Virus record (IMG/VR): IMGVR_UViG_3300027749_002876
Coordinates: 124,001-188,000 of that record
Reading direction: 5' to 3' (one strand)
DNA: 64,000 bases
Shown here: positions 2,180 through 56,214 of the stretch, piece after piece
How the letters are laid out: every line of letters begins with the position of its first letter
Numbering within the stretch: the first letter of the stretch is position 1
Notes under the pieces: model-generated
Databases searched by the model: none
What the model saw: only the letters and a program-made list of their open reading frames with translations
What the model was told of the DNA's origin: nothing
Translations under genes and position numbers: made by a program

Positions 2180-2182
2180 ATA

Positions 2183-3197: not shown

Positions 3198-3226
3198 AGT
3201 ATAGCATAGATTGGAATTAATGTCAA
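3198..3226 (-). promoter_or_regulatory. sigma70-type promoter P1 (TTGACA-17-TATACT, extended -10 TG)
   Basis: Near-perfect consensus in an intergenic region upstream of the leader peptide. Confidence 0.8.
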
Positions 3227-3248
3227 CTTCTTTTTTAGGCGGTTTACC

Positions 3249-10766: not shown

Positions 10767-10778
10767 ATTATTATTTAT

Positions 10779-11309
10779 TCACAGCTTCATAGTTAGTAAC
10801 CATTGTTCAACTCCGTTAAACATTACCGGTTCATTAGATGCAACAAAAGTGTGATTAGGGAAAGCTTTAGGTAAAAGATATCTTTGATTTAAAACAAACA
10901 ATGTGTAATTATAATCATTAAACGAAATAATAACGCTATCACAATTTAAATTTTTGGCTCTTTCAATTTGATATGTAGTATTATACATGTGAGTATAAGA
11001 TTTGACACCTAATCCTTTATGTCTGTTGTCAGCATTAGAGAACCCACGAAATACTGCTTGATACACTTTGTTACCTTCAAACTCTCTAATCATTCCACCT
11101 GTTGCCGTCCAAAATTTATCATTTACATATAATAATTGATATGTATCAATTTTCTCATCTCTAATTAAACTTAATAAACTCCATGGATGAAGAGTGCTAT
11201 AGTTTTCAGGTATATTTTCCCCAAATTTTTCAATTAACGCCAACTTCAATTTTATAGTAAACTCACTTTTATTTTCTTTGGTGAGTGTAACCATTTCTAC
11301 CTTATCCAT
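10779..11309 (-). CDS. hypothetical, possible GNAT fold
   Basis: RHKGLGVK motif; weak. Confidence 0.5.
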   Translation of the reverse strand: MDKVEMVTLTKENKSEFTIKLKLALIEKFGENIPENYSTLHPWSLLSLIRDEKIDTYQLLYVNDKFWTATGGMIREFEGNKVYQAVFRGFSNADNRHKGLGVKSYTHMYNTTYQIERAKNLNCDSVIISFNDYNYTLFVLNQRYLLPKAFPNHTFVASNEPVMFNGVEQWLLTMKL

Positions 11310-11310
11310 A

Positions 11311-12807
11311 TTAAAATTTCAAATTAGTATGCTTCTTCAATAATTCTATTGCCCTAGCTCTTTCAAACGAAGGACCAACATCAAATATTTTTAATTGATT
11401 AACTGTTTTATTTTCTATGTCATCATCTGAAATACCCATATGCCACGCAGTTGGTAATATCCAACCACCGGCTCGTCTTTTTATATTAGATATATTATTT
11501 AAGGTAATTCCCAATTTATGAGCGGCTGGCATATCTATGAATTCATTTTTCCAATGTATGAAGTGACCCGGAGCTCCGGGAATTACGGGTATTTTATTTA
11601 CAACCTCATATCCAAATTTTTCAGGATTATTATCTATTTCACTTGCACCTTTACCATATTTGTCAATATACATACCGAGGCCACTGAAGTGCCAACTAAC
11701 ACAAAATTCATCTTGATTTTTTATCATGTATGTTAGTGTTTTGTATTGATTATCAACCGTGTCATGTGGTAATCCTACAATGAAACTAGCTTCTAGTTTT
11801 ACATTAGTACGTTGTCTGAACAGTTTAACTGCGTCTGCAACTCTGTCAAAATCCATGCCCTTCTTTACAGCTTTTCTAGATTCGTTGTTCATACTTTCCA
11901 TACCCAAAAACCCACCTGACACACCTAACGCTTTCATTTTGTCAATCATTTCAGGTTTAGTTGCCAGTAGTTCAGGCTTAAGATATGACATAAATTTAAA
12001 ATCCGGTAACTTAGCCATATCAATTGCTCTATGTAATCTATCTAGTTTTTCCATGCTATCATTAAAGGTGTCATCCATTAAAATATATCGTGTTGTACCA
12101 AACTGCTCATAATTGCGTCTTAATTCTCTTGCTAAACTTTCAGGTGTTCTTTGATAGCTATCATAATCTTTTGCCCCTTGAAAAGGATGACTGCAAAACG
12201 AACATCTAAATATACATCCACGTGCTACTTCTAATGGCACAGGTTGATAAGATAAAAAATTATCTTCTACATCAAGTACAGTTTCAATTTCATCCGGATT
12301 CATAATTTTATGATTGATATCACTCTGTACTACTTTCTTACCATTATCAGTATCTACAAAATATTTTAATCCATGATTTGGTTTGCCACTGAATAAGTCT
12401 AATAGTTTAGTATAAGATATATCACTAAAACCCACTAGAACCCAGTCACAATTTCTATATACAATTTGAGAACCCTTGACCCATGGACCACCTGGTCCAC
12501 CGCATACAAATTTTACATGAGGGTATTTAACACGCAAGTCGTTAAAAAACTTATCATTAATCCAATTAATATCAGATTTTTGATATCCATCTAACCACGC
12601 AATACTAAAACCCAACATCAATGTTTTTTCGGTTACTACACTGTCTAACAATGTTGTTAATTCATCCCAAGACATTGAAGGTGCTGTATCTATAACAAAA
12701 GTTTCATAACCATATTTTCTTCCTTCTGTTCTTAATCTATAACCGGCTAATATCCTACCACCAATCAAATGTCTATTACCGCCTATAAAAATTGCATCAT
12801 ATTCCAT
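11311..12807 (-). CDS. radical SAM protein with a putative N-terminal cobalamin-binding-like domain
   Basis: EVARGCIFRCSFC (CxxxCxxC), DDTFND, GMES, FIVGLP. Confidence 0.85.
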   Translation of the reverse strand: MEYDAIFIGGNRHLIGGRILAGYRLRTEGRKYGYETFVIDTAPSMSWDELTTLLDSVVTEKTLMLGFSIAWLDGYQKSDINWINDKFFNDLRVKYPHVKFVCGGPGGPWVKGSQIVYRNCDWVLVGFSDISYTKLLDLFSGKPNHGLKYFVDTDNGKKVVQSDINHKIMNPDEIETVLDVEDNFLSYQPVPLEVARGCIFRCSFCSHPFQGAKDYDSYQRTPESLARELRRNYEQFGTTRYILMDDTFNDSMEKLDRLHRAIDMAKLPDFKFMSYLKPELLATKPEMIDKMKALGVSGGFLGMESMNNESRKAVKKGMDFDRVADAVKLFRQRTNVKLEASFIVGLPHDTVDNQYKTLTYMIKNQDEFCVSWHFSGLGMYIDKYGKGASEIDNNPEKFGYEVVNKIPVIPGAPGHFIHWKNEFIDMPAAHKLGITLNNISNIKRRAGGWILPTAWHMGISDDDIENKTVNQLKIFDVGPSFERARAIELLKKHTNLKF

Positions 12808-13669
12808 AACTATTATTTTTTTCTATTAATTTAAAATATTCATGGTTGCTGGAGCCCCACCATTTTTCTTTCCAACTATTAACTAATTGGATATCGGGGT
12901 GATTGAATATAGGACTTTGTTCTACTATTTCATACCCGTGTTTCTTACTACGTTGTTCTAACTTAAATTTATTTTGATTATTGTATACATGTACTTTACT
13001 TGAATAAGAACCCGTTTTACCAGGTATAATATTATTTATTAATTGTTGCATTGTCGGGTCTGTCAAAAACGCAAAAAACTGTTCGGAAGTATAACTTAAA
13101 AAGAAAGGAGTCCCGTATATGTTGTTGTTTTTAAAGAATTCAAATTGAGTGTAAACCGGTTCTATTTCATCCACATACCATTTGCCATCAGTATGTAATA
13201 GTAAATGAGGATTAGAATCACCTGTAATTACAGTGCCGTCGATCTGAGTAGTAAGCCACAAATTACTAGGAAGCTGATATGCGGCTATTTTATATTCTGT
13301 TGCAATTTTTAAAAATTCACCCGATTCAACAAACTTGTCATAGTCTAAATCAATAACAACAGGTGTAATACTATTTTCATCACAATACTTAAATGCATAT
13401 TGAGTTTCATGGTGATTATATTGTGTACGCATAATTACTGGAGTAATTGGCATACCCAAAGATTTAAATACAGCTAATGCATATTCACTATCAAGTCCAC
13501 CGCTATAACACAAAAACAAGTTACCTTGCTTTTGTGACCATACTATTTCTGCTACATTAACTGTTTCTTCATAATAGGAACTAATGGGTCTAACAGGACT
13601 GCTTATTTCAACATTCCATGTAGACCCATTGCCACTACTTTGTAAGTAGTTAGAATAAAGTAACTTCAT
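12797..13669 (-). CDS. PP-loop protein
   Basis: LCYSGGLDSE motif; C-terminal KKHGYE. Confidence 0.7.
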   Translation of the reverse strand: MKLLYSNYLQSSGNGSTWNVEISSPVRPISSYYEETVNVAEIVWSQKQGNLFLCYSGGLDSEYALAVFKSLGMPITPVIMRTQYNHHETQYAFKYCDENSITPVVIDLDYDKFVESGEFLKIATEYKIAAYQLPSNLWLTTQIDGTVITGDSNPHLLLHTDGKWYVDEIEPVYTQFEFFKNNNIYGTPFFLSYTSEQFFAFLTDPTMQQLINNIIPGKTGSYSSKVHVYNNQNKFKLEQRSKKHGYEIVEQSPIFNHPDIQLVNSWKEKWWGSSNHEYFKLIEKNNSYGI

Positions 13670-13674
13670 TAGTG

Positions 13675-14220
13675 TTACGGTGCTACTTTACCAATCGCTG
13701 TAACAACTGCGGCAATACGACCCACTGCCATCAATTCTTGCGTAGTCATGCCTTCAGCCTTTAGAGTGTTATAGTGTGCTTTAACACAGAAATGACATTT
13801 ACCAACAATACTTGCGGCTAATGAATACATTTCGAATTTCTTCTTAGATACACCACCGTGAGTAGCATACGCATTCATACGTAATCCTGCAGGTAAACCC
13901 TTCATGCCTTCATCACCTGCCATTTCAACGAATGGATACCATATATTGTTTTGACCCATGAGACTTGCGGCTGACTTTGCGGCTTCACGTTCTTCTGCAC
14001 CCATTAGTGGCCCGTTCATTTGAATTTCAAATGCTAGTTCACCGTTTCCTGATGCAATAGCGGCTGCTAATGCACAAGCATGTGCATCAATCAAATCTAG
14101 ACCACTGCGATTAATAACCGCATCTAAATTCAACTTAATGTCTTTAGAATGATCTGGTATAGATTCTTTTATGTTTGCAACCCAGTCGCCTCCGATTGTG
14201 ATTGGATTGATTTCATTCAT
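13675..14220 (-). CDS. ahpD: alkyl hydroperoxide reductase AhpD
   Basis: KDIKLNL, NNIWY, SIVGKCHFCVKAH CxxC motif; adjacent to ahpC. Confidence 0.9.
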   Translation of the reverse strand: MNEINPITIGGDWVANIKESIPDHSKDIKLNLDAVINRSGLDLIDAHACALAAAIASGNGELAFEIQMNGPLMGAEEREAAKSAASLMGQNNIWYPFVEMAGDEGMKGLPAGLRMNAYATHGGVSKKKFEMYSLAASIVGKCHFCVKAHYNTLKAEGMTTQELMAVGRIAAVVTAIGKVAP

Positions 14221-14756
14221 AGCGTTGCGCCACCGATAGCACGATTACATGGGCATAGTTCGCCAGTTTGTAATGCGTCTAATACACGCAATGTTTCTTC
14301 TGGGCTACGACCAACGTCTAAGTTGTTAACTGTGATGTGTTGGATAACATTTTGCGGATCAACAATGAATGTTGCACGTAGTGCCGCACCTGCCGGAGCA
14401 TAGAATACTCCTAACTGATTAATCAAGCTACGCTCATCACGTGCTGTGTCAGCAAATTGATTATGACTAATTTTTGCTAAGTCTGGGTGTGCTTTTTGCC
14501 ATGCTACTTTACAGAACTCGTTATCTGTTGAACCTGTTAACAATACTGCGTCTCGGTCAGCAAAATCACTTGCTAGCTTATCAAATGCTACGATTTCTGT
14601 AGGGCATACAAAAGTAAAATCTTTTGGATAGTAAACGATAATTTTCCATTTACCTGTAAAACTTTCTTCTGTAATTGGGAAGAATGCATCTTCCGATTGT
14701 CCTGGTTTAACACCTGTTAATACAAATGCTGTTAATTTATCACCGACTGTTTTCAT
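14217..14756 (-). CDS. ahpC: peroxiredoxin AhpC
   Basis: YPKDFTFVCPTE, GRSPEETLRVLDALQ, LCPCN. Confidence 0.95.
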   Translation of the reverse strand: MKTVGDKLTAFVLTGVKPGQSEDAFFPITEESFTGKWKIIVYYPKDFTFVCPTEIVAFDKLASDFADRDAVLLTGSTDNEFCKVAWQKAHPDLAKISHNQFADTARDERSLINQLGVFYAPAGAALRATFIVDPQNVIQHITVNNLDVGRSPEETLRVLDALQTGELCPCNRAIGGATL

Positions 14757-16168: not shown

Positions 16169-16285
16169 TTAATCCTTTTTGAACATAGTGAAGATTTTTG
16201 CTTGTATGTTCTTTGCAAACTGCGGTTGAGGGAAATTCCAACCAATAAAAGCACCTAGTGCTAACCAAAATAATGTTTCTAACAT
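16169..16285 (-). CDS. small membrane protein MLETLFWLALGAFIGWNFPQPQFAKNIQAKIFTMFKKD
   Basis: Translated by hand; AAGGAG SD; fills the gap before iscU. Confidence 0.65.
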   Translation of the reverse strand: MLETLFWLALGAFIGWNFPQPQFAKNIQAKIFTMFKKD

Positions 16286-16312
16286 ATTATATACTCCTTG
16301 TGTATGATGTAT

Positions 16313-16879
16313 TTATGCAATTGATTCTTCATCGTCTAATACAATCCAACCCAATTTCAACAAATCTTCTCGTATCTCATCAGTTACCATACCTTCACCT
16401 ACATACGCTTTGTTTTGCATATACATTTCTTGCTGTTTAGTGGTTAGTTTTTGAAATTCATCATCATCTAATTCTTTTGCATTTCTGATACCACTACAAT
16501 ACCAGTCAATATAGTCGCCTTTTTCTTGCATATCAGCAACAATACCGCCGGCGTGTCTCCAACTGCAACTCCAGCGTTTTTCAGTTAATATAGGCCATAC
16601 ATCATTTTTAGTAAAGTCTCGGTTACACATTGCGGCATACAAGTTTTGTGCATACACAGCATCACCTTTAACTTTATCAACAATCCATTGAGTACTACGC
16701 AAATCATACTCCATGTTATCTTTTTGCCAATTAGGATCTACTATGTTTTCTTCATCCTGTTCACGCCAAGATTTATACATATCAATGTAGTCAGGATTGG
16801 GCTCTTTGCCTTCTTCTTCACAGCGTTTAACATACCCTTCTTTTTGAAAGGTATGTCGTTCTGGGCTACTACTTATCAT
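16313..16879 (-). CDS. hypothetical phage protein
   Basis: YAQNLYAAMCN...SCSWR...DYIDWYCSG. Confidence 0.7.
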   Translation of the reverse strand: MISSSPERHTFQKEGYVKRCEEEGKEPNPDYIDMYKSWREQDEENIVDPNWQKDNMEYDLRSTQWIVDKVKGDAVYAQNLYAAMCNRDFTKNDVWPILTEKRWSCSWRHAGGIVADMQEKGDYIDWYCSGIRNAKELDDDEFQKLTTKQQEMYMQNKAYVGEGMVTDEIREDLLKLGWIVLDDEESIA

Positions 16880-36900: not shown

Positions 36901-39900
36901 CCAAAGTAACCATTTTTAATAGTAATAGAATTTAATGTTGGTGCACTGTATACGAAATATCCTTCACCTGCAATAATTCCATTGAATGAATTCGTGAATT
37001 CAATATCATCGTCAACAACTAATCCATGATTAGTACTAAATGTAATTGTTTTACCACCAGCAATAGTAGTAACTGATAATACAGTACCACCATTTAAGTA
37101 ACTAGCAGTTAAATTAGATACCGATGTAACATTAGCTGCCGGGTGAATGAATAAACCTTGACTGATGTTATCAACATATTCTTTTGTTGCCGCATCTGTT
37201 GGTGTAGTAGGTAATGCAAGACTTGTAATTCTTACACTACCCACATCAACTGTACCAGTACCAAAAGTGTGCAAGTTGATATTTGTATTACCAGTTTGCT
37301 GAGAATAAATGTCTAATGCACCAACATTAGATGTTAGAGTTGGTGAGTATAATGCACCTGCATTAACATTACCAGTAGCATCAATATAACCTGTTACGTT
37401 TGCGCCAAGTTCAGATACAACAATAATATTAGCAAAACCGTTTGCACTAAAAGCAATATTACTATCTTGGAAGATTGCTATGTTTGATGTTCCATTTGCT
37501 AATATACCATACAAGTAATTAGCACTGACAATATTTGCAGTTACGTTACCAGATGCAGTAAAGTGGTTAGCAGATGCTAAATTACCTAAATTAGCATTTA
37601 GTGATGTTAAGTTACCAGTAAAGTTACCATAACCCGTAATATTAGCACCAGTTGGTGTTATTATTACTGTTGTGTTTCCACCTGCTGTTACACCAACGTT
37701 ACCATTATTTGCAATAGTTACATTAGATGAACCGTTAACTAATACACCAGTGAAGTAATTGGCAGATGCCAAGTTACCTAAATTAGCATTCAATGATGTT
37801 AAGTTGCCACTAAAGTTAGCAACATTACCAGTCAATATATTTGCCACTGTTGCATTGTTTGCTGTCAAATTACCAGTTACATTAGCAGTCAATGCTGTTA
37901 ATGTATCACTGATGTTTGCATTGTTAGCAGATGCTAAATTACCTAAATTAGCATTTAATGATGTTAGATTACCACTGAAATTAGCGACATTACCGGTTAA
38001 CAGATTTGTTACTGTTGCATTGTTTGCACTTAAATTACCAGTTACATTAGCTTGAGCCGCTGTAAGAGCTGTTGTAATATTAGCATTAACTGATGTAAGA
38101 TTTGCTGTTACATTTGCATTGTTGGCTGTTAAATTACCAGTTACATTAGCTTGGGCCGCTGTAAGAGCTGTTGTAATGTTAGCATTAGCTGATGTAAGAT
38201 TTGCTGTTACATTTGCATTGTTGGCTGTTAAATTACCAGTTACATCAGCAGTTAATACTGTTAATGTAGCACTGATATTTGCATAGTTAGCAGTTAACAA
38301 GTTACCAGCTGAAATATTACCAGCTGAAATATTACCTGATACACTGAACGCATTAGCATTTAACGTATTAATATTTGCAATGTTTGCAATCAATGTGTTT
38401 GTTACATTAGCATTACTTGTTGTCAACAATGTTGTTACATTGGCATTACTTGTTGTCAACAATGTTACGATGTTTGCGCTATTTGCTGTTAAAACGTCAG
38501 TTATGTTTGCGTTAGCAGATACTAGATTGCCAGAGAAATTAGCAAAGTTTGCTGTTATTAAATTACCTAAATTAGCATTACCGGATGTGATATTACCGTT
38601 AATATTTGCTACGTTTGCAAGAATTGTTCCTAGAACGTTAGCATTATTAGATTGTAAGTTACTAGAAACTTGCAAGAAGTTAACAATTGCATAATTACCT
38701 AAGTTAGCATTACCTGCTGTCAAGTTTGCACTAATGTTAGCGTATTGTGTTTCTAAGAACTGTGCAATGTTTGCATTACCTGCATACAAGTTGCCAGTTA
38801 TGTTTGCTGTGCTTGCATTAATATTACCAGAAATATTTGCAGTGTTTGCATTTAATATTCCAAAGTTTCCATAATTAGCTGTTGCTAAATTACCTAAATT
38901 AGCATTTAGTGCAACGATATTACCAGAAAAGTTTGCTGTATTACCAGAAAGTGCTAGGTTAACTTTTAAGTTAGTTGTTGCATTGATATTACCGGGACTT
39001 GTAAATGAACCGTCTTGTGCAAATGTCCAAGTATTAGCAATTGAACCACCTGTACCAACTTGTACAGTTACATTACCACCACGATTTTGGTATAAATCTG
39101 TTTGACTTCCACCTAATGTAAGTCCAGAACCACCAAATGTTCCACCAACAATTTGTGAAGCACCACCTAATTCTACTTGACCACTTGGTTTAAATTGTGT
39201 TGCGTTGCCAGCTGAGTAGATTGCTACGATACCACTACCGTTGCCCATACCAATACTTGTATTAGCTGTTATATTAACTATGTTTTCAGTTTGTACGTTT
39301 CCAGCTGTTACTAAGTTACCACCAGTGACGTTACCACTAAAATTACCAACGTTACCGTTTAAGGCGCCGCTGATATTTGCAGTGCCAGTAACATTTAATG
39401 TTTGAGTAGCATAATCAAACGTAAAGTTTGCGCTTGCGCCAAAATTGTTACTACCGTCATTGTATTGAATCTGTGTATTTGCACCGGCAGCTTCTTGTAA
39501 ATCCCAAGGTTGACCGTTTGCATATAATAGATTGTTTGTACGAACATTGCCAGCTTGCATTGTATCTGTAACATTAATATTACTTGATGCGTTAACAAAG
39601 TTAGCTGTTGCTAAATTGCCTAAGTTAGCATTTGTTGATATGATGTTACCATTAACATTTAGATATCCAACTACATTTGCGCCTGTTGTAGTAACAACTA
39701 ATGTTGTATTACCACCTGCAGTAAGATTAATATTACCATTTGCTGTAGGGATGCTTAAATTACTAGTACCGTTGCTCACACCAGACGTGTTTAGTCCTGT
39801 TAATTGACTACCATTACCAATAAAGTAACCAGCAGTGATGTTAGCAGTAGATGTTAAATTACCACCAATAACTACTTGCCCGGTTCCATTAGGATTAATG

Positions 39901-48456: not shown

Positions 48457-50469
48457 TTAATAAGTTGGTAACGCCGCTGTGGGTGGCGTGAAGTTGGCGG
48501 TGTATCTGGCGTATCCCTTGGTGATGCGGAGATCGTCAATGTAGCCATTGAATGCAAATGGATCAAATGCAGTAGCAACGTATTTGAAAGGCACTGTATA
48601 ATTTGTAGAATTAGAACCAGTACTAACCGAAGTTCCGTTTATGTATAATTTCATTGTGCCACTTGACCTTACAACTGCTACGTGATTCCAAGTACTTTGA
48701 GTAACAGTTCCAGTGACTACATTTGTTGTATTGTCTTTCCATCCAATCTGATTTGCAGTACCTGTGTAACCAAAATAAACTAATCCGGTGCCATCTCCGC
48801 TTGTTCTTGAATCTAATAGACCAGCATATGTTGAACCATATGTTAAATTTGGATACATCCACATTTCTACAGTGAAATCTCCAGAACCCAATGGTAGTGT
48901 TGTACTAACAGGTAATAATAACCAATCACCTGAGCCATCAAACGCCATACTTGAACCGCCAAACTTGCTTTGTGCAGTGGATATTTTGGCATCGCCCACT
49001 GTTTCTAATTCGGTAATCATTGCATTGTCAATGATACCAGCGTTGGTGTAGTTGAGTAGTAGGCTTGTGTTTGTGATTGCTGTTAGTGGTGATGTGGGTA
49101 CGGTTACAGTGGTAACACCCGAACCTTTAACTATGCGAAGGTCTTCTATGTATGCTTTTGCATAAACAGGAGCACCGTCATTTGATGCACCAATCAACAA
49201 GGTGCCACTTGTATCGATATTTGCAGTAACAGAAGTTGGTGTCATTGCTGATACACCATTGATAAATTGATACAATGTTCCGCTAACTCGGCTAGTAACT
49301 ACATGAGTCCAGGTATTCAATGGAAAAGTTGAAGTGGTAATATAATTTGTGCCGGTATAAAAATTAAGTTTTCCGGCAGTATCCGTGTACCAAACCCAGG
49401 GAGCAACAGATCCAGTAGTAGTTCGTTTATCAAGTATTCCACTATTACCAGAAAAACTAGTTATATAAATCCACGCTTCTATTGTAAAATCACCAGTACC
49501 TAAATTTAGGGCAGCATTATTGGCCACACTCAAATAATCCCCTGAGCCGTCAAAGTATCCTGACCCACCGATTGTGCTGGCACTGTATGCGGCTGTGGGT
49601 TCGAATGGTGAGAATCGTTGTACAGTTGGTGAACCTGTTAGTGTAATGGCAAAAGTGTTTGCGGAGTTGTCAATGAATCTATTGCTTTGACAGGTTAATA
49701 ATCTTGTACCCGATATAGCAGTCAATGGAGTTGTGCTTGGAGTAAATGCTGATGAATAAACAACTGTATTTGTCAACCGGTAATTAGAAATGTAGCCAGA
49801 AAAATATGTTGGTTGATTGCCTTCAACACCAATATTGTCATTTTGGTTAAGACCAGCGGCTGCTACACCAGTATAAGTTGCAGAAGTTGTACTTAATACC
49901 CCGTTGACATAAATTTTAATTGTAGTGCCATTAATTGTAGCCGCAATATGAGTCCATGTATTAAGTGGAACATCACTTGTAGACGCAGAATCTACATTTT
50001 TATATCCCCCGTCATACCAGTAAAATCTAACAGCTCCATTACGAATACCAAAATTAAAGTATGTTGCACCTTTAGCCTGAACGGGAGAAAACATCCAAGC
50101 AGATGCACCTGTGTTATATGCTGTTGGATACACCCATGCTTCAAATGTGGCAGTTATACCAGTAGCTGAACCTGTACAAAGAAAGTTTGATGCAGTTGTT
50201 CCTGCGGTTAAATAACTGCTACCTGTAAAGAAATTACTCCAATTACTTCCATAAGGACTAAACGTGCCTTGTGTTGTATTACCGTTGCGAGTTATTGCAA
50301 AGTTGTTTGTACTACCATCTAAAAATGTATTGTTCTGTGCAAGATTTGTACCATTCCCTGGTAACAACAATGAGTTGTACATAAAGTATGGGTCGTTTGC
50401 GGCAGCTCCCGAAGGTGCAAACGTCAATCCACCACTAAATGTTATACCTCCGGTTACTGTTACTGTCAT
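48457..50469 (-). CDS. protein with three LamG/concanavalin A-like domains (receptor-binding/appendage)
   Basis: Three copies of (FT/TF)xExWxY...W(T/N)H...(Y/F)(V/I)NG...YI. Confidence 0.85.
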   Translation of the reverse strand: MTVTVTGGITFSGGLTFAPSGAAANDPYFMYNSLLLPGNGTNLAQNNTFLDGSTNNFAITRNGNTTQGTFSPYGSNWSNFFTGSSYLTAGTTASNFLCTGSATGITATFEAWVYPTAYNTGASAWMFSPVQAKGATYFNFGIRNGAVRFYWYDGGYKNVDSASTSDVPLNTWTHIAATINGTTIKIYVNGVLSTTSATYTGVAAAGLNQNDNIGVEGNQPTYFSGYISNYRLTNTVVYSSAFTPSTTPLTAISGTRLLTCQSNRFIDNSANTFAITLTGSPTVQRFSPFEPTAAYSASTIGGSGYFDGSGDYLSVANNAALNLGTGDFTIEAWIYITSFSGNSGILDKRTTTGSVAPWVWYTDTAGKLNFYTGTNYITTSTFPLNTWTHVVTSRVSGTLYQFINGVSAMTPTSVTANIDTSGTLLIGASNDGAPVYAKAYIEDLRIVKGSGVTTVTVPTSPLTAITNTSLLLNYTNAGIIDNAMITELETVGDAKISTAQSKFGGSSMAFDGSGDWLLLPVSTTLPLGSGDFTVEMWMYPNLTYGSTYAGLLDSRTSGDGTGLVYFGYTGTANQIGWKDNTTNVVTGTVTQSTWNHVAVVRSSGTMKLYINGTSVSTGSNSTNYTVPFKYVATAFDPFAFNGYIDDLRITKGYARYTANFTPPTAALPTY

Positions 50470-50478
50470 AATATTCCT

Positions 50479-50916
50479 TTATTCACGGTTCTTTAATATA
50501 CTACGCAACATCCAACTATGTTTTTCGTGTGCGTCTAGTCGTTCAGCAATGAAGTTTGCGATACCTTGTTTGTTCTCATCTTCAGCAGAAACAAAACAAC
50601 CATTTAGTAAATCAATCATCTTTTCATTATCAGATAATAACTCAGCAAACATTAAGTGTGGACGAGGAACTTTAAGTTGGTCCTCAATGATAGTTAGTTC
50701 TGCATAACGTGACAAACTACCCGGTGCATAGCTATCTAGTGTGCGAATATACTCTCCAATCGGGTCAATGGAATTATACACCTCAGCATAAAAATCACCT
50801 AAAAACTTGTGGTATTGCGGGAAGTTATCACCCTCTATATTAAAATGAAAACCATGTATTTTTACATAAAATGCAAAAGTACTACCTAACAATACCTTAA
50901 GATTATCTACTAACAT
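50479..50916 (-). CDS. dps: Dps/ferritin-like DNA protection protein
   Basis: HGFHFNIEG.NF.QYH, D.IGE.IR, HEKHSWML. Confidence 0.9.
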   Translation of the reverse strand: MLVDNLKVLLGSTFAFYVKIHGFHFNIEGDNFPQYHKFLGDFYAEVYNSIDPIGEYIRTLDSYAPGSLSRYAELTIIEDQLKVPRPHLMFAELLSDNEKMIDLLNGCFVSAEDENKQGIANFIAERLDAHEKHSWMLRSILKNRE

Positions 50917-51023
50917 TTGAAATTCCTTATATAACTATATTTATCTATTTTAGCATAAATAAAAGTGAGGATCGCGGTACTGGAAATACCCACCCTCTCT
51001 AATGCTAAAAAGGAGCAATCAGC

Positions 51024-51620
51024 TTGACTATTTATTCAACTTCGGACCATCGTAAGATTTACGAAACACACATTGGTCCAATTCCAAAAGACATAGAAGG
51101 TCGTAGTTATGAAATTCATCATATTGACGGAAATCACAATAACAATGAATTGTCAAATTTATTGTGTGTTTCTATTAGAGAACACTATGAAATACATAAA
51201 TCTCAGGGAGACCTTAAGGCTTGTTTAATTATGTCTCAAAGAATGGGTGTTTCCCCTGAAGAAAAATCACACCTAGCAAAATTATCAAATACAGGAAAAA
51301 ATAATCCAATGTATGGTACTATTTGGATTAACGACGGAATTATTAATAAGAAAATTCGCGGAGATATACCCGAAGGCTGGGCACGAGGCAGATTAATATC
51401 ACACGAACACGCTTCAAAATTTACAAAACGATCCAAAGTTGGTACTAATAACACTAGATTTAATAAGACAATTTATTGTTTTGAGAATATTAAAACACTA
51501 GAACAAATTCATAGTACATCATATGAGTTTGCTATTAAGTATGGAGTTAGCACTGTTGGAATAAGAGGTCTCATTCAAAAAAACAAGACCTCTTATAAGG
51601 GTTGGCGAATGGTTTTTTGA
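51024..51620 (+). CDS. HNH homing endonuclease
   Basis: YEIHHIDGNHNNN..NL...EHYEIH; NUMOD-like GKNNPMYG; opposite strand to neighbours. Confidence 0.85.
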   Translation: MTIYSTSDHRKIYETHIGPIPKDIEGRSYEIHHIDGNHNNNELSNLLCVSIREHYEIHKSQGDLKACLIMSQRMGVSPEEKSHLAKLSNTGKNNPMYGTIWINDGIINKKIRGDIPEGWARGRLISHEHASKFTKRSKVGTNNTRFNKTIYCFENIKTLEQIHSTSYEFAIKYGVSTVGIRGLIQKNKTSYKGWRMVF

Positions 51621-54600
51621 TTATTCATTTCTAGGCAATACGAATACTCTACCGCCTGCTAAAATAGCCATATAGTTTCCTATGCCACGCTCACCCATTA
51701 CAGCTTGGGGGATAACAATTTGTTGCCCGCCGCGTGGTCTGATGCCACCAGGTTCTAACATAATCATTTTATATTCTTGTCCATCAACTGTAACAGTACC
51801 TGCTTGTCTATCAGCACGTTCTGCACGAACTAATCCTTGACCGGGTATAGTTGCAGTAGATGGTGTTGCCGCCGGAGCTGGATCAGTTGCTTGTTGTGTA
51901 GCAGTGGGTTTCATTCCACCTACTTGATTACCGTCAGCATCATATGTTACACGACCGTGTGCGGCACCTGTACCTAATGCCATTGCACCAGTCAATGCGG
52001 CGGCACCTAATTTTTGTTTCCAACCTTCGTCTACATTTTCATTAGACTTTTTCTTTGTATCAACATTGATAGCTTTACCACTACGATCTGGATTAGGATC
52101 TTCTCTACGCTTACGTTGAGCGGCACTTGCACGACCCTTCTTACCTAAACTATGCGCTTTACTTTGAGGCAAGCATTTTGGTTTACCTTCTCCTGGTTCT
52201 CTAGCACACGGACCTTTAATCTTTCCTTTAGTATCCATGCGAACCCATTTTTCTTTGTTGAACCAATCGTGCAAACTTTCATCTGCTTGTTCAATACCTT
52301 CTAGTATAGAACTTTCATTCTTCTTTCCACCGTTGCCCCAGTTACTTGCACCTTTTTTACGACATTTAACTAATGCCCCAGACGCATAAGCACTTGGCCA
52401 TACTTTATAACGACTCTTTACTTTATAGTAGCAAGCATCTTTCTTTTCGTTCATTAGTTCTTCGCTAACCATTTCACCACCACAGTGTGGGCAACTATGT
52501 TGTGCTTCCGCCACACCTTGCTGACCCGGCACTGTATCAACAATGTTTATCATTTTATCAGGAACTATTTGTACAGGAACATTGCCGTTGTATCCGGCGG
52601 CTTGGTATGCGATAAATCTATGATTCCCATCTATTACAAAAAGTTTACCTTTGTTATTCCAAACAACTAACGGACCTAATTTCCCATTTTGTTTTAGTTG
52701 TGGTAAAAGATTGTTATTGACCCATTGAGCAACCTTTGGATCCTTCATTGACTTACCATTTTCCCACATTTGTAATTTATTAAAAGGTGCTTCAGTTACT
52801 GGCAAACTTTTCTTTATCCTGTCATCAACAGTAGCACCTTTATAAGCAGGATTTGTGTAGATAGTTACTAGTTGCTGTTCCAAGGCTTCCGCCACACCTT
52901 GCTGTCCTAGTAATGATTGCACCCAAGGAATGAACGTGTTAATGATCCAGTCATTGTGCTGTTTGCTTTTGTCCAGTGTGCTGGAATCTGCCACACGACC
53001 GTTTATGGTCACAGGCTTGATATTGTTCACAGCATCTGTAATTTTCTTCTGCACAGCAGGATCAGCATCCTTGATAACTGTTTGCAGTCGGCCAGCGGCT
53101 TCACTTTGTCTGCCTTGCATGGCCAACAATGCCACACGTTGCAGATTGGCAAACACAGGATCGCCTAGGTTGTTGAACGCCTTGGTGATACCAGCGGCGG
53201 TGTTATTTTCTGCCACACCTTCCGCCACACCTTCGTTCTTCACACAGTTGGGATATGTTTTTCCAAACATTTTTTTGTTACCTTCTTTGTGATAACCTTT
53301 CCAACAAGCTTCATCTAAATTTTCATGGTCTCCGTGAGTTTCACACATACCACAATCAGGACAAGTCATCTCCATAACATTGTCAATACTTTCATTGTGC
53401 TTCTTCTTACCTGCACAATGAGCCTTTTGACTAAAGCCTTTAGGATGACTACAGTTGATACTGGATTTATATTTTTGACTCCACTCTTCCTCTACATTTT
53501 CAGGCATCATACCGTGTTTTTTAACGTGTGCATCTAACTCATCACGTTGCTTATTCAATTCCTGTATACGTGCTTTGTCACCCATCTGAATAGCGTGTCT
53601 GAGTTTTTCCTGAATACTATCTGCTAAATCCATATAATCATTCATTCTCATTCTAGTAGGAACACTATCATCTTCATCAATACCTTTTGGTTTAGCATAT
53701 GCGGCTTTGTTAGTCAATAATCTATTCTTAACATATTCTAATGCTTTGTCTAGTTTTCTATTCAACTCAACATAGTTATCTCTTGCACCATCACGTGCTA
53801 ACATACCTGTATCAACACCGGCTTCAATGTTTGGTGTCAATAAGCCTTTCTTATCAAGTCTCTGAACTAAGTTATCTAATATACCTTGTTTCTCAATAGC
53901 TTTGTTTAATTGACCTAATCTAGTTTTTAGGTCAGAATGTTTCTCACCTGGCATCGCTACCATAGGACTAGATGTTGCTCTTTGTCTAAGATTAGGTTCT
54001 CTTGCCGTGAACTTAGCAACTGTGTTTTGTTTAAAATCTTTTTCCCACTGTTCTAACTCAGCCATACGTTGTTGTTCAAGTTGTTGTTTAACTTGTTGTA
54101 ATGCTTGTATAGACTTAGATGTTAGTTCATCACCTAAGCTTTCTGGTAATGGTTTATCTAGTTTCTTTATTGGTGGTCTAGTAGGTGGATGATAAGCTGA
54201 TTTAGCTCTATTCTGTGTTCCTAATATTTTAGGATTGTTTACTCTAGGGTAACCAGTTTTGAATGGGTCAATTGGTTGTTCAGTAGCTTCATCCATACCT
54301 TGCTCTATAACTTCTACGAATTTTTTACCAATAGGATTAATATAAGGTTCTGTAGGGTTGAATGTAGCTAGTTTGTGTGCCAATGTTTCTGCCATATCGC
54401 GGCCAGAAATACCATCAGCAACTATTGCACTGCCGGATCTTTTAATTTGATTTAACACGCTAGCTTGTGGGCTGGCTAACTGTGCCCCGTAGCTGTTGAA
54501 ATCTTTTGGAGGATACTGTTTAGGAAATACAGCACTTAGAGCTTCCCAAATTGCGGCGGCTGCAGGGCCACCTCGTCCAAGTGGCCCATATACTTTGATA

Positions 54601-55142
54601 GCAAAACCATGACTAGGTGGTTTGTTAGTAGCAGGCGCAGTGAATGTTTCTACATCACCTTCAAACTCATTTATTCCCTGGCTGATGCTAGATTTCTTTT
54701 TATCATTATCAAATTGTTTCTTAGTTGCTTTAACAATACCACTAAAACGTTTGTTACCACGCTTATGATTACCTTCACTGTCAGCCTTACTTGCATCAGA
54801 CGCAGCCGCTGTTTTATATTGACTTAACTTGGTGTTAGATAATTCATCTAGTTGAGATTCCGCTACACTGCGACTTACTAATCCAACTTCTAATTCTGGA
54901 CGCTTTGCTAATAGTGATTGTCTTGCTTTTAATGCTTGTTCTTTACTAGCAAACGTAACTGTCTTGCCATCTTTACTCCAAACTTTGCCATTAATCTTTA
55001 ACGCCCATTCTTGTTTAGATGGTTGCTGAACATCTAAATCGTGTCGTTCATCATCTCTTGGACCGCGACTGAAGCCAGTACGATTATCACCATATCTTCT
55101 ATGTGTAGCTTCGTTTAATAAACCTTTAAGAATTTTACTCAT
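51621..55142 (-). CDS. modular head-associated polyprotein including a ParB/Srx-like module
   Basis: Short modules separated by (V/L/I)xE and QQGVAE linkers; PLVV...VIDGNHR. Confidence 0.7.
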   Translation of the reverse strand: MSKILKGLLNEATHRRYGDNRTGFSRGPRDDERHDLDVQQPSKQEWALKINGKVWSKDGKTVTFASKEQALKARQSLLAKRPELEVGLVSRSVAESQLDELSNTKLSQYKTAAASDASKADSEGNHKRGNKRFSGIVKATKKQFDNDKKKSSISQGINEFEGDVETFTAPATNKPPSHGFAIKVYGPLGRGGPAAAAIWEALSAVFPKQYPPKDFNSYGAQLASPQASVLNQIKRSGSAIVADGISGRDMAETLAHKLATFNPTEPYINPIGKKFVEVIEQGMDEATEQPIDPFKTGYPRVNNPKILGTQNRAKSAYHPPTRPPIKKLDKPLPESLGDELTSKSIQALQQVKQQLEQQRMAELEQWEKDFKQNTVAKFTAREPNLRQRATSSPMVAMPGEKHSDLKTRLGQLNKAIEKQGILDNLVQRLDKKGLLTPNIEAGVDTGMLARDGARDNYVELNRKLDKALEYVKNRLLTNKAAYAKPKGIDEDDSVPTRMRMNDYMDLADSIQEKLRHAIQMGDKARIQELNKQRDELDAHVKKHGMMPENVEEEWSQKYKSSINCSHPKGFSQKAHCAGKKKHNESIDNVMEMTCPDCGMCETHGDHENLDEACWKGYHKEGNKKMFGKTYPNCVKNEGVAEGVAENNTAAGITKAFNNLGDPVFANLQRVALLAMQGRQSEAAGRLQTVIKDADPAVQKKITDAVNNIKPVTINGRVADSSTLDKSKQHNDWIINTFIPWVQSLLGQQGVAEALEQQLVTIYTNPAYKGATVDDRIKKSLPVTEAPFNKLQMWENGKSMKDPKVAQWVNNNLLPQLKQNGKLGPLVVWNNKGKLFVIDGNHRFIAYQAAGYNGNVPVQIVPDKMINIVDTVPGQQGVAEAQHSCPHCGGEMVSEELMNEKKDACYYKVKSRYKVWPSAYASGALVKCRKKGASNWGNGGKKNESSILEGIEQADESLHDWFNKEKWVRMDTKGKIKGPCAREPGEGKPKCLPQSKAHSLGKKGRASAAQRKRREDPNPDRSGKAINVDTKKKSNENVDEGWKQKLGAAALTGAMALGTGAAHGRVTYDADGNQVGGMKPTATQQATDPAPAATPSTATIPGQGLVRAERADRQAGTVTVDGQEYKMIMLEPGGIRPRGGQQIVIPQAVMGERGIGNYMAILAGGRVFVLPRNE
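52504..52904. repeat. 20-bp direct repeats GCTTCCGCCACACCTTGCTG (52504-52523, 52885-52904) flanking the ParB-like module
   Basis: Exact match; partial copies at 53211-53233. Confidence 0.85.
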
Positions 55143-55143: not shown

Positions 55144-56214
55144 TTACTTCTTACCAGTTATTTTATCTACGGCACGGTCAATACCAGCCTGACGTTTTTC
55201 AATCTTGGCATCTTTTTCAAAACGACTTGCAGGTAATTTTGAATTGAAAGCGGAAGTAGCTACTCTAGCACCTTTCTGAAACTGTGTATCACCTTTACGG
55301 TTAGCCATATCACCTGATGCTGATTTTACATAACTACCTAATGCTTTTGGACTTAATTCGTCAAGTTGACTCTCACCCATTTCACCATTGGTCATAGCAC
55401 CAGTAGTACCTAAACTTTCATTAGCACCTTGCTGACCATATGCATCAATCATTTGCCTAATATAGAAATTATAAAAACCACGACGGCTATTGTATTCTCT
55501 ATCTCCTAATACAGTCTTTAGTGCCTTTACAGCATCATTTACATCTGAACCACGCATTATTTTTAATGCATCAGTAACAAGTGAATCAACTCTATCATTG
55601 CCTTCATTCATAGCATCTGGATCAGTTTGCATTTCTTTTGCGCTGATTAAGTAATCCATAACTGTTACCATGTTACTCTTTACAGCACCAATCTTTTCTG
55701 AAACCCATTCTGGGAAGTTATCTCTAGTCGATAGCTCTTTATCTAAATGACTTGCTACACGAACAATAGTATGTAAACTATTTTTTAATGTTTCACCTTC
55801 GTGTTCTGATTTATCAGGATCGTGCTTAACAAAACCAGACTTTTTTAAACGACCTTGACCAGGAACAACTATTAAATCTTGTTCGCTTAAATCAGTTTCA
55901 TTGACTGGTGGTGCGGGTCTTTGTTGAGGCTGCTTATTCATTGAAGCCTTCATTTCTTCTCTACTTTTACCGTATTTCTTTTGAAATTCAGCTGGTTTCA
56001 TATTCTGTAAGTCATATGCTAAATCTTTCATTGCGGCTTCGTTTAAACTGTTAGCAAATGCTTTATTAGTTTTCTTGCCTTTAAGTAGATTACCTACTTT
56101 ATTGCCACCATAAACACTTGGATTACGTGTTTGCATTTTGACAAAACCCATTTCAGTGGGTGCAACTGAACCTGCTGTTGTGCTTGTTTCTTGGATAATT
56201 TGACTGATTTTCAT
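55144..56214 (-). CDS. modular head-associated protein
   Basis: MKISQIIQE N-terminus; ESQLDELS module shared with the neighbouring gene. Confidence 0.65.
   Translation of the reverse strand: MKISQIIQETSTTAGSVAPTEMGFVKMQTRNPSVYGGNKVGNLLKGKKTNKAFANSLNEAAMKDLAYDLQNMKPAEFQKKYGKSREEMKASMNKQPQQRPAPPVNETDLSEQDLIVVPGQGRLKKSGFVKHDPDKSEHEGETLKNSLHTIVRVASHLDKELSTRDNFPEWVSEKIGAVKSNMVTVMDYLISAKEMQTDPDAMNEGNDRVDSLVTDALKIMRGSDVNDAVKALKTVLGDREYNSRRGFYNFYIRQMIDAYGQQGANESLGTTGAMTNGEMGESQLDELSPKALGSYVKSASGDMANRKGDTQFQKGARVATSAFNSKLPASRFEKDAKIEKRQAGIDRAVDKITGKK

What the first reader, a model, noticed from the sequence alone, without database searches (positions are those of the whole stretch)
52504..53233. QQGVAE linker doubles as a DNA repeat bounding exchangeable cassettes
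Seen: an exact 20-bp direct repeat (52504-52523, 52885-52904), including synonymous positions with GC-rich codons (GTG GCG), flanks the ParB-like module. Partial tandem copies at 53211-53233 bound a second, visibly more GC-rich module, and a related GCACCTTGCTG occurs near 55424. Inference: microhomology-driven in-frame insertion and excision of effector cassettes, each automatically flanked by cleavage sites, giving an integron-like array inside a single ORF.
Basis: partly seen in the sequence, partly recalled or inferred. Interest (0 to 1): 0.7.

Follow-up and report, generated by a model that had tools for sequence, protein, structure and literature searches.

The report
Cleavage-site linker doubles as recombination joint
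A freshwater giant phage builds a multi-domain protein, probably packed in the capsid, from modules joined by a short linker; the linker looks like a protease cutting site, and its DNA is kept almost letter-for-letter identical across many phages, marking the exact places where modules have been swapped.

Summary
The 20-mer GCTTCCGCCACACCTTGCTG occurs exactly at 52504-52523 and 52885-52904 (0.01 expected). On the minus strand it encodes QQGVAEA. The two copies flank a 127-aa ParB/Srx-fold module in a 1173-aa ORF (51621-55142, minus) of a 524-kb freshwater jumbo-phage record. A tandem EGVAEGVAE (53208-53231) bounds a module with GC3 0.51, against 0.19-0.32 elsewhere.

The linker is family-wide. 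The same 20-mer lies in frame in 31 IMG/VR contigs with unrelated flanks. In 120 linkers not selected by the search, codons are fixed at GGT GTG GCG GAA, although GTG and GCG make up only 20% and 8% of Val and Ala codons.

The ParB cassette recurs at 96% nucleotide identity in another contig, and identity stops at the linkers. Similarity-block ends cluster at linkers (37/71 against 5/71 random). Residues before the core follow the upstream module; the residue after it follows the downstream module.

The record has an S77 prohead protease, T4 CTS-like leaders and an L-x-E site in the capsid protein. I read the linker as a prohead-protease site that also serves as short homology for in-frame module exchange.

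I found no integrase, no attC-like hairpin and no excision product. "Integron-like" is an analogy only.

The parts
51621..55142 (-). P0001, a 1173-aa polyvalent polyprotein made of nine modules. They are separated by hydrophobic-x-Glu sites: SVAE95|S, GINE159|F, GMDE285|A, NVEE552|E, GVAE641|GVAE645|N, GVAE752|A, GVAE879|A, NVDE1039|G.
   Evidence: BLAST blocks against relatives start and stop at these sites.
52504..52523 (-). Linker copy 1 (20-mer; QQGVAE879|A880), at the C-terminal boundary of the ParB/Srx module.
   Evidence: The same 20-mer is in frame in 31 IMG/VR contigs.
52885..52904 (-). Linker copy 2 (20-mer; QQGVAE752|A753), at the boundary between module M6 and the ParB/Srx module.
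52506..52886 (-). Module M7 (aa 753-879), a ParB/Srx-fold domain with the invariant D-G-x-H-R motif (VIDGNHR).
   Evidence: It occurs in 197 cluster representatives at very different positions in proteins of 104-1759 aa.
52887..53207 (-). Module M6 (aa 646-752), helical, function unknown, GC3 0.505. It looks like a recent import from a more GC-rich relative.
   Evidence: In relatives, M6-like modules follow the ParB module instead of preceding it (P0072, P0018, P0021).
53208..53231 (-). Tandem linker GVAE-GVAE (two 12-nt units). It may be a scar of out-of-register exchange between linkers.
   Evidence: It is the only exact GVAEGVAE tandem in the sequences examined.
53208..53486 (-). Module M5 (aa 553-645), a Cys-rich zinc-ribbon-like module. 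It is 81% identical to the paralogue at G000 10846-14511.
52026..52505 (-). Module M8 (aa 880-1039), a zinc ribbon plus a DUF5872-like basic module. Cyanomyoviruses carry it as part of free-standing proteins.
51624..52025 (-). Module M9 (aa 1040-1173), a C-terminal module with a hydrophobic Gly/Ala-rich segment.
53487..55142 (-). Modules M1-M4 (aa 1-552), bounded by decayed linkers (SVAE, GINE, GMDE, NVEE). M1 and M2 stand in the opposite order in the paralogue.
55144..56214 (-). P0002, the adjacent 356-aa ORF of the same system. It has a T4-CTS-like leader, MKISQIIQE|T, and a degenerate linker QQGANE|S (55417-55434) followed by an M2-like module. In contig L031 its homologue is fused through QQGVAEA to an M1-like module.

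Best explanation
P0001, with its neighbour P0002, is a polyvalent polyprotein of a freshwater jumbo phage, probably packaged in the capsid. It is built from independently folding modules (a ParB/Srx domain, zinc ribbons, small basic modules). The modules are joined by a short unstructured linker with consensus x-Q-G-V-A-E|[A/G]. At the protein level the linker is most likely a cutting site for the phage's T4 gp21-type (S77) prohead protease, which would release the modules inside the head. At the DNA level the linker is a GC-rich box, rAG CAA GGT GTG GCG GAA GS, conserved across a whole guild of uncultured aquatic phages. This box is the place where modules have been exchanged, duplicated, permuted and replaced, always in frame and always rebuilding a linker. 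The likely mechanism is short-homology recombination by the phage's own recombination machinery. Shown here: the repeat, the fixed codons, the cassette boundaries at the linker, and the crossover zone inside the GVAE core. Inferred: the proteolytic cleavage, capsid packaging, the recombination mechanism, and why the nucleotides stay fixed. The fixation could be a by-product, because only consensus linkers spawn new junctions, or it could be selected.
For: (1) The repeat is exact and not due to chance.
(2) The same 20-mer occurs in 31 IMG/VR contigs, always in frame as QQGVAEA in open frames of 180-1216 aa with unrelated flanks. By contrast, 596 Gb of bacterial genomes give only 4 hits, one of them a phage-like polyprotein.
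(3) Codons are fixed. In 120 linkers not selected by the search pattern, GGT is used in 104, GTG in 106 (background 0.197, p = 5e-59), GCG in 98 (background 0.083, p = 1e-83) and GAA in 104. The wobble base of the preceding variable codon (Q, E or K) is also mostly G.
(4) Control: the CTS-like leaders of the same genome are also conserved peptides ending in a predicted cleavage site, yet they use ordinary, variable AT-rich codons.
(5) The ParB cassette is 96% identical in nucleotides between the window and L022. Identity runs from the upstream linker to the last base of the downstream linker and is absent beyond. Cassettes at 97% identity or more sit in at least six otherwise different proteins.
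(6) Internal ends of blocks at 85% nucleotide identity or more lie within 25 nt of a linker in 37 of 71 cases, against 5 of 71 for random positions (Fisher p = 3e-9).
(7) 282 segments fall into 162 module clusters. Of the 51 clusters with several members, 23 have two or more different downstream partners and 23 have two or more different upstream partners.
(8) Residues P6-P5 follow the upstream module (0.51, against 0.16 background). P1' follows the downstream module (0.94, against 0.34). This places the crossover inside the invariant core.
(9) Logan contigs from four freshwater metagenomes break at 52505, 52884/52886 and 53221 and continue in several different ways there.
(10) Protease-site reading: an S77 prohead protease is encoded. 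The capsid protein and its relatives in PA5oct and Vibrio phage 2.275.O share an L-x-E site at one alignment column. P0002, 10 G000 ORFs and most of the ParB-module relatives listed begin with M[RK]x.E[FI][ILV].E, resembling the T4 capsid targeting sequence MKTYQEFIAE, which is cleaved after the Glu. The linker residues are disordered in the model (pLDDT below 50 at residues 124-127).
(11) A RecA/UvsX-like recombinase is encoded.
Against: No cleavage or packaging data exist for this phage or any relative that carries the linker, and no cultured phage with the linker was found. The exact excision product (M6-linker-M8) was absent from IMG/VR and from JGI metagenome contigs, so activity in this lineage is not shown. 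About 31 of the 71 block ends lie more than 60 nt from a strict linker. Selection for viable in-frame products would by itself push junctions into inter-domain linkers. Twelve to twenty base pairs is short for efficient homologous recombination. Fixation of unusual codons could have a translational or RNA-level cause instead. Part of the junction statistics is dominated by proteins chosen for carrying the ParB module.
Confidence: 0.6

Rival explanations
1. The linker matters only at the protein and translation level. It is a protease site or plain inter-domain spacer whose unusual codons (GTG, GCG, G-ending codon before it) are selected to slow the ribosome between domains or for some mRNA feature. 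Modules are shuffled by ordinary illegitimate recombination, and only in-frame junctions in linkers survive.
For: GTG and GCG are rare codons in these ORFs (0.197 and 0.083). Domain boundaries are where viable junctions must fall in any case. No excision product was found.
Against: Fixation is to one specific codon at each of five or more positions, not to 'any rare codon'. Gly uses the commonest codon GGT rather than the rare GGG, and Val uses GTG rather than the rarer GTC. Junctions rebuild one perfect linker, with the crossover inside the 12-15 nt core. Random joining plus selection would instead give ragged junctions. CTS leaders, which also end in a predicted cleavage site, show no codon fixation.
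Confidence: 0.17
2. The 15-20 nt box is the recognition site of a dedicated enzyme, such as a site-specific recombinase, nuclease or homing-type endonuclease. That would make it a true integron-like cassette system.
For: A strictly conserved, oriented, non-palindromic nucleotide motif occurs only inside these genes: 6 copies of the 12-mer in G000, all in polyprotein genes. Jumbo phages carry many nucleases, and a GIY-YIG-like ORF lies next to the capsid gene.
Against: G000 has no tyrosine recombinase, and no inverted repeat or hairpin involves the linker. No candidate enzyme is linked to the locus. No circles or deletion products were seen.
Confidence: 0.1
3. The mosaic is an assembly artefact: metagenome assemblers joined different phages at the shared repeat.
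For: All data come from metagenome assemblies. The G000 contig itself ends in a 99.6% copy of 172924-177012. Assembly graphs branch at the linkers.
Against: The shared box is only about 20 nt, shorter than the word length of the Logan graph described by the tool and, from general knowledge, of usual final assembly words. The window's arrangement has even depth (43-45) across modules in run X1. The same junction types recur in independent samples and studies (for example L042/L085, L093/L098/L119, L006/L009). The protein-level pattern is seen in 150 independent cluster representatives.
Confidence: 0.04

Closest known systems
T4 internal proteins (IPI, IPII, IPIII, Alt) with the capsid targeting sequence, processed by the gp21 prohead protease
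   Same: Both have proteins delivered through the capsid, a short conserved leader ending in hydrophobic-x-Glu that the S77 protease cuts, and a highly diverse cargo behind a conserved signal (PMC3012670; bioRxiv 10.1101/2021.01.19.427310). Here an S77 protease and CTS-like leaders are present.
   Different: T4 internal proteins are separate small genes cut once. Here up to nine modules sit in one ORF, separated by internal sites. The internal sites, but not the leaders, are fixed at the nucleotide level.
Polyvalent proteins of phages and conjugative elements (Iyer et al. 2017, PMC5512222)
   Same: Both are multi-domain, highly mosaic proteins encoded next to virion genes, include ParB-type domains, and are thought to be injected and processed into separate units.
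   Different: In that paper processing is assigned to an embedded zincin-like MPTase domain, and no conserved linker is described ('linker' occurs 0 times). Here no peptidase domain is detected in the polyprotein, and processing is predicted to occur in trans at a repeated linker that is also conserved as DNA.
PeSL cassettes of T4-type phages (Arbiol et al. 2010, PMC2839356; Comeau et al. 2014, PMC4122927)
   Same: In both, short conserved sequences flank variable units and serve as sites of homologous exchange without a dedicated integrase. The PeSL authors also draw the comparison with integrons.
   Different: PeSLs are intergenic promoter-plus-stem-loop elements that move whole genes, and mini-circles were demonstrated by inverse PCR. 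Here the box is coding, has no hairpin, moves protein domains in frame, and no circles are shown.
Conserved-motif recombination inside T-even tail-fibre and adhesin genes (gp38 glycine-rich motifs; Trojet et al. 2011, PMC3157838, citing Tetart et al. 1996, 1998)
   Same: [quoted passage not shown]
   Different: The gp38 motifs form the structural core of one domain, and the variable parts are loops. Here the motif is a disordered inter-domain linker and a predicted cleavage site, and whole folded domains are the units exchanged.
Ejection-protein processing in giant phages (SPN3US gp245, cuts after A-x-E; PMC10052503)
   Same: A T4-type prohead protease cuts many head and ejection proteins after x-x-Glu motifs, sometimes at several sites in one propeptide.
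   Different: The reported cuts mostly remove N-terminal propeptides. A string of functional modules separated by identical sites, and DNA-level conservation of the site, are not described there.
Integron gene cassettes
   Same: Both are arrays of exchangeable units, each bounded by a repeated sequence.
   Different: There is no IntI and no attC hairpin. The units are protein domains inside one reading frame rather than promoterless genes. The resemblance is an analogy only.

Membership tests
Integron | IntI-type tyrosine recombinase encoded with the array | tested here: not met
   PF00589 gives no match in the whole 524,565-bp record, while all 14 control genomes match.
Integron | attC sites: imperfect inverted repeats that fold into hairpins at cassette ends | tested here: not met
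   The 20-mer is not self-complementary. None of the three inverted repeats in 52400-53300 involves a linker.
Integron | Excised circular cassettes and site-specific re-insertion | tested here: inconclusive
   The precise deletion junction was absent from IMG/VR and JGI contigs. Only assembled contigs were available, not raw reads, so rare circles could not be seen.
T4-type capsid internal proteins (CTS plus gp21 processing) | S77 (gp21-like) prohead protease in the genome | tested here: met
   PF03420 scores 94.2 bits, E 1.9e-27, at G000 353734-354165, lying between the portal/scaffold-like genes and the capsid gene.
T4-type capsid internal proteins (CTS plus gp21 processing) | N-terminal capsid targeting leader of about 10 aa ending in hydrophobic-x-Glu | tested here: met
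   P0002 starts MKISQIIQE|T. Ten G000 ORFs and most of the ParB-module relatives listed start M[RK]x.E[FI][ILV].E, compared with T4 MKTYQEFIAE. P0001's own leader (MSKILKGLLNE|A) matches only weakly.
T4-type capsid internal proteins (CTS plus gp21 processing) | Cleavage after Glu by the prohead protease; presence in the mature head | not testable with these tools
   This needs virion proteomics. The indirect support is an L-x-E site at one alignment column of the capsid protein in three phages and a disordered linker in the model.
Polyvalent proteins (Iyer et al. 2017) | Two to fifteen unrelated domains in one polypeptide of a phage, encoded near virion genes | tested here: met
   There are nine modules. 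The neighbours include a baseplate-wedge-like virion protein.
Polyvalent proteins (Iyer et al. 2017) | Embedded MPTase (zincin-like) peptidase domain for self-processing | tested here: not met
   No peptidase family is found in P0001 or P0002 with Pfam at E up to 1 or with PHROGs. A very divergent domain cannot be excluded.
ParB/Srx superfamily (module M7) | ParB N-terminal/sulfiredoxin fold with the conserved D-G-x-H-R-type motif | tested here: met
   The single sequence is below Pfam's threshold (E 0.018). A 41-sequence profile hits ParB, SbnI, Spo0J, Noc and Srx at E 2e-8 to 1e-4. The model has pLDDT 90.7, and its top 25 Foldseek matches are all of this fold. D86, G87, H89 and R90 are invariant. 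Membership in the DdrB subfamily and nuclease activity were not tested.
PeSL regulatory cassettes | Intergenic early promoter plus stem-loop terminator | tested here: not met
   The box lies inside a reading frame and has no stem-loop. The system works like PeSLs but is not one.

The most novel reading that the evidence does not exclude
The linker is an evolved, nucleotide-level recombination joint. On this reading it is a GC-rich homology box embedded in coding sequence and kept by selection, because it lets a guild of freshwater jumbo phages swap capsid-delivered effector domains in frame, each swap rebuilding a protease site. That would be a dedicated domain-shuffling system, a phage counterpart of exon shuffling or of integron cassettes, but operating within proteins.
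Probability: 0.35. Interest if true: 0.85.

Novelty: new variant of a known kind. Interest (0 to 1): 0.72.

Why it matters
Phages are thought to carry fast-changing sets of injected proteins that counter host defences, but how such sets are reshuffled without breaking reading frames is poorly understood. Here one 7-residue, roughly 20-nt element appears to solve three problems at once. It separates folded modules, it tells the head protease where to cut, and it gives DNA recombination a common in-frame address. If confirmed, it explains the extreme mosaicism of polyvalent proteins in one phage group, with 294 junction types among 343 junctions. It also gives a simple sequence tag for cataloguing hundreds of candidate capsid-delivered modules in metagenomes. 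Finally, it offers a natural design rule for building multi-cargo phage capsid payloads. A full-text search of open-access papers and bioRxiv preprints found no phage paper that mentions the motif.

Tried and rejected
1. Megablast of the gene and tblastn of the ParB module against 50,697 cultured-phage records gave no match. Only the small zinc-ribbon and basic modules hit cyanomyoviruses.

2. The degenerate QGVAE pattern in the whole records of PA5oct and Vibrio phage 2.275.O gave one hit in PA5oct. It turned out to be out of frame in a 119-aa ORF, so it is chance. The Vibrio phage had none. No cultured carrier is known.

3. The precise excision product (M6-linker-M8) gave 0 hits in IMG/VR and 0 in JGI metagenome contigs.

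4. Joints 52522>52882, 52526>52886 and 52527>52875 in Logan contigs were rejected as evidence of excision. Only 20-23 letters fit on one side, which is the linker itself.

5. I tried to compare synonymous-codon identity in linkers and flanks for junctions conserved between diverged genomes. Only 2 usable pairs were found, so it is uninformative.

6. I first suspected that G000 is a 1.5-fold concatemer with period 347,553. This was rejected because 126,273 of 177,012 positions mismatch. I then suspected a concatenation of several genomes. Head genes are single copy, so this is not a simple concatenation.

7. Simple tandem duplication within this one gene was rejected as the origin of the repeat, because the same 20-mer occurs in 31 other contigs with unrelated flanks.

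8. I checked by eye whether the linker could act as an internal Shine-Dalgarno plus GTG start. The spacing is wrong and no conserved start codon follows. This was not pursued.

9. Repoila et al. 1994 (PMC395341), on shuffling at the T4 internal-protein locus, is not held in the library. It is cited only through PMC3012670 and PMC4122927.
Full report
OBSERVATION. The 20-mer GCTTCCGCCACACCTTGCTG is present exactly at 52504-52523 and 52885-52904. No other copy exists in the 64-kb window even with three mismatches, and 0.01 are expected. Both copies lie in a 1173-aa ORF on the minus strand (51621-55142, P0001). There they read CAG CAA GGT GTG GCG GAA GC = QQGVAEA. At 53208-53231 the same core is duplicated in tandem (GGT GTG GCG GAA GGT GTG GCA GAA = GVAEGVAE). 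The module between the tandem copy and the second 20-mer (aa 646-752) has GC3 0.505, against 0.19-0.32 in the other modules. The 'related' sequence near 55424 is a degenerate linker, QQGANE|S, in the adjacent ORF P0002 (55144-56214, minus). The one addition is that the coding strand is the minus strand.

CONTEXT. The window is part of a 524,565-bp IMG/VR virus record (G000, GC 36.7%). The public runs that hold the sequence are freshwater and lake metagenomes. The capsid protein is 64-67% identical to those of the jumbo phages Vibrio phage 2.275.O, Sinorhizobium phage Phosso and Pseudomonas phage PA5oct. The head module has the order portal, acidic protein, S77 prohead protease, scaffold, capsid protein, and each gene is single copy. 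Around P0001 lie virion genes, including a baseplate-wedge-like protein.

ANATOMY OF THE PROTEIN. BLAST blocks shared with relatives divide P0001 into nine modules. Each ends in hydrophobic-x-Glu: SVAE95, GINE159, GMDE285, NVEE552, GVAE641/645, GVAE752, GVAE879 and NVDE1039. The module between the two 20-mers (M7, aa 753-879) is a ParB/Srx-fold domain. The single sequence is sub-threshold in Pfam (E 0.018). A profile of 41 homologues hits ParB, SbnI, Spo0J, Noc and sulfiredoxin chains at E 2e-8 to 1e-4. An AlphaFold model (pLDDT 90.7) matches only that fold, and D-G-x-H-R is invariant. The last four residues of the model, which are the linker, have pLDDT below 50. Other modules are zinc-ribbon-like and DUF5872-like small basic units. 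Cyanomyoviruses also carry these, in another order and without GVAE linkers.

THE LINKER IS A FAMILY-WIDE, NUCLEOTIDE-LEVEL ELEMENT. An exact scan of IMG/VR found the 20-mer in 31 further contigs (GC 0.35-0.49). It is always in frame as QQGVAEA in open frames of 180-1216 aa, and both the amino-acid and nucleotide flanks are unrelated among most of them. As an empirical chance control, 596 Gb of bacterial genomes gave 4 hits, one of which is a phage-like polyprotein binned in a Haliscomenobacter MAG. A codon-degenerate scan brought in more polyprotein ORFs, and these carry up to seven xQGVAE[GA] sites each. To avoid ascertainment bias I counted only the 120 linker instances that the search patterns could not have selected. 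Among these, Gly is GGT in 104, Val is GTG in 106, Ala is GCG in 98 and Glu is GAA in 104. In the same ORFs GTG and GCG account for 19.7% and 8.3% of Val and Ala codons (p = 5e-59 and 1e-83). Even the variable residue two places before the Gly (Q, E or K) prefers its rarer G-ending codon. The nucleotide consensus is rAG CAA GGT GTG GCG GAA GS. There is an internal control. Ten ORFs of G000 begin with a conserved leader peptide that also ends in a predicted cleavage site, yet these leaders use ordinary and variable AT-rich codons. The fixation is therefore a property of the internal linker, not of cleavage sites in general.

MODULES ARE EXCHANGED AT THE LINKER.
(a) The ParB cassette of the window is 96% identical in nucleotides (394/410) to a stretch of contig L022. 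The alignment begins in the upstream linker and ends on the last base of the downstream linker, and the modules on both sides are unrelated.
(b) An exhaustive HMMER search found the module in 197 cluster representatives, at positions from the N-terminus to residue 1119 in proteins of 104-1759 aa. Six representatives that belong to different 50%-identity clusters carry it at 97% identity or more. Its edges carry G[VLMI][AD]E in 46 of 128 upstream boundaries and 58 of 127 downstream boundaries. By inspection, most of the rest carry a looser hydrophobic-x-E.
(c) The paralogue in the same record (G000 10846-14511, 1222 aa) shares M5 (81%) and M8-M9 (79%). Between them it has an unrelated 58-aa module flanked by KEGVAKG and NKGVAE|E, in place of M6+M7, and it has M1 and M2 in the opposite order.
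(d) In an all-against-all comparison of 80 polyprotein ORFs, 37 of 71 internal ends of blocks at 85% nucleotide identity or more lie within 25 nt of a linker, against 5 of 71 random positions (Fisher p = 3e-9). Block starts fall 12-22 nt before the cleavage point and block ends 0-9 nt after it. This is the pattern expected if the blocks are linker-module-linker units.
(e) Cutting these ORFs at the linkers gives 282 segments in 162 clusters. Of the 51 clusters with several members, 23 have two or more different downstream partners and 23 have two or more different upstream partners.
(f) Among 294 distinct junction types, the two residues before the Gly go with the upstream module (same in 0.51 of pairs, against 0.16 overall and 0.13 for a shared downstream module). 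The residue after the Glu goes with the downstream module (0.94, against 0.34 overall and 0.39 for a shared upstream module). The exchange point therefore lies inside the invariant core. This sample is enriched for ParB-containing proteins, which inflates the second figure.
(g) In four freshwater metagenomes the Logan contigs covering the window break at 52505, 52884/52886 and 53221, with several different continuations at those points. The window's own arrangement has even depth of 43-45 in run X1.

WHY A PROTEASE SITE. The record encodes an S77 (T4 gp21-type) prohead protease. In T4 the internal proteins are cut once, next to a roughly 10-aa capsid targeting sequence, MKTYQEFIAE (bioRxiv 10.1101/2021.01.19.427310). 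The related giant-phage protease gp245 cuts after A-x-E (PMC10052503). P0002 starts MKISQIIQE|T. Ten ORFs of G000 and most of the ParB-module relatives listed start M[RK]x.E[FI][ILV].E, for example MRAQEFITE|G directly followed by the ParB module. The capsid proteins of G000, PA5oct and Vibrio phage 2.275.O share L-x-E at one alignment column about 43 residues from the N-terminus (LAE, LVE, LME). The acidic head protein has QGMVE|A. V-A-E| fits this specificity. Cleavage and packaging themselves are inferred, not shown.

MECHANISM AND WHAT REMAINS OPEN. The simplest reading is short-homology recombination within the 12-20 nt GC-rich box. The core is 67% GC (70% over the 20-mer) in a genome of 37% GC. 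The recombination would be carried out by general recombination functions; a RecA/UvsX-like gene is present and no tyrosine recombinase is. Every exchange is automatically in frame and rebuilds a linker. The tandem GVAEGVAE may be an out-of-register scar. Why the wobble positions stay fixed is not settled. It may be a by-product, because new junctions can only arise between consensus boxes, so a survey of distinct junctions is dominated by young, consensus ones. P0001's N-terminal half carries decayed linkers such as GMDE, GINE and NVEE. Alternatively there may be selection or gene conversion. My attempt to separate these readings with conserved junctions had too few pairs. I found no evidence of ongoing excision in this lineage. 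The predicted M6-linker-M8 junction is absent from IMG/VR and JGI contigs. The apparent 359-nt 'skips' in Logan contigs rest on the 20 linker letters alone. Raw reads were not available for these runs.

COMPARISON WITH WHAT IS KNOWN. Four known systems come close.
(1) T4 internal proteins: diverse cargo behind a conserved, cleaved capsid targeting sequence (PMC3012670), with shuffling at the internal-protein locus noted long ago (Repoila et al. 1994, as cited in PMC4122927).
(2) Polyvalent proteins: mosaic, multi-domain, with ParB-type domains, encoded next to virion genes. Processing is ascribed there to an embedded MPTase, and no conserved linker is mentioned (PMC5512222).
(3) PeSL cassettes: short conserved intergenic elements that mediate modular shuffling and mini-circle formation without an integrase, which their authors compare with integrons (PMC2839356).
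(4) Recombination at conserved motifs inside T-even adhesin genes (PMC3157838).
The present case combines these. It is an in-ORF, disordered linker that encodes a protease site and is conserved as DNA, and it bounds whole folded domains. It is not an integron, because IntI and attC are both absent. A full-text search for the motif returned only alpha-synuclein papers. No cultured phage in the 50,697-record collection carries the ParB cassette, and the two related isolates I scanned (PA5oct and Vibrio phage 2.275.O) carry no in-frame linker.

VERDICT. I rate it a new variant of a known kind, with interest 0.72.

Noticed in passing
G000 520477-524565 against 172924-177012 (window 48924-53012): The last 4,089 bases of the 524,565-bp record are a 99.6% direct copy of the region that holds M6 (part) to M9 of P0001 and the downstream genes, including both 20-mers. 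This is either a third, recently converted polyprotein locus or an assembly artefact at the contig end.
   Followed up: partly
G000 1-175 kb against 375-524 kb; also 39-4058 against 187824-191860: There are long series of inverted, colinear paralogous segments at 70-88% nucleotide identity, while the portal, protease, scaffold, capsid and tape-measure genes are single copy. This could be large-scale internal duplication of accessory and structural genes, or a partly chimeric assembly of related phages.
   Followed up: partly
G000 10007-10852, 16227-16799, 36973-37890, 66497-67927, 258305-259089, 466254-467405, 493577-494473, 519136-520095; window 55144-56214: At least ten ORFs begin with a leader resembling the T4 capsid targeting sequence (for example MRATEFVTE, MRAKEFISE, MRINEFITE). 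This suggests a large repertoire of capsid-internal proteins.
   Followed up: partly
L128 12815-16735 (G000 357815-361735): Four consecutive paralogous genes of about 310 aa lie 1.2 kb downstream of the capsid gene, after the GIY-YIG-like ORF. They are built of repeats such as TNLVSNTGVVATDTTGVGTAR...AIFGYG. Related copies lie at about 269-272 kb and 276-278 kb.
   Followed up: no
L128 11776-12756 (G000 356776-357756): A 326-aa ORF lies immediately after the capsid gene with a GIY-YIG-like N-terminus (IYKTTHTNGKYYIGRH). PA5oct has a homing endonuclease annotated at the same position.
   Followed up: no
L130 2450-3499 (Synechococcus phage S-RIM2, AON98902.1): This cyanophage 'hypothetical protein', lying between the terminase small subunit and a virion structural protein, contains the same small zinc-ribbon and basic modules as M5 and M8 in a different order and without GVAE linkers.
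   Followed up: partly
L135 1726-1745 (MAG Haliscomenobacter sp., NZ_JBBAKG010000049.1, 42,862 bp): A contig binned with a freshwater Bacteroidota MAG carries a polyprotein with the exact 20-mer followed by an M5-like zinc ribbon. This is either a hint to the host or a binning contaminant.
   Followed up: no
window 52482-53235: A Logan contig of run X1 (depth 7) replaces M6+M7 and their linkers by 34 other letters that join M5 to the zinc ribbon of M8. This co-occurring variant lacks both cassettes but was not made by linker-to-linker deletion.
   Followed up: partly
window 52056-52547 and 53204-53531: Summed contig depth over M8 and M5 is 3-8 times that of the neighbouring modules in all four metagenomes (for example 160-350 against 45 in X1). 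These small Cys-rich modules are therefore shared by many co-occurring phages.
   Followed up: no
window 51624-52025 (M9): The C-terminal module has a Gly/Ala-rich hydrophobic segment (KLGAAALTGAMALGTGAA) resembling a membrane or fusion-type helix. It is conserved at 79% in the paralogue.
   Followed up: no
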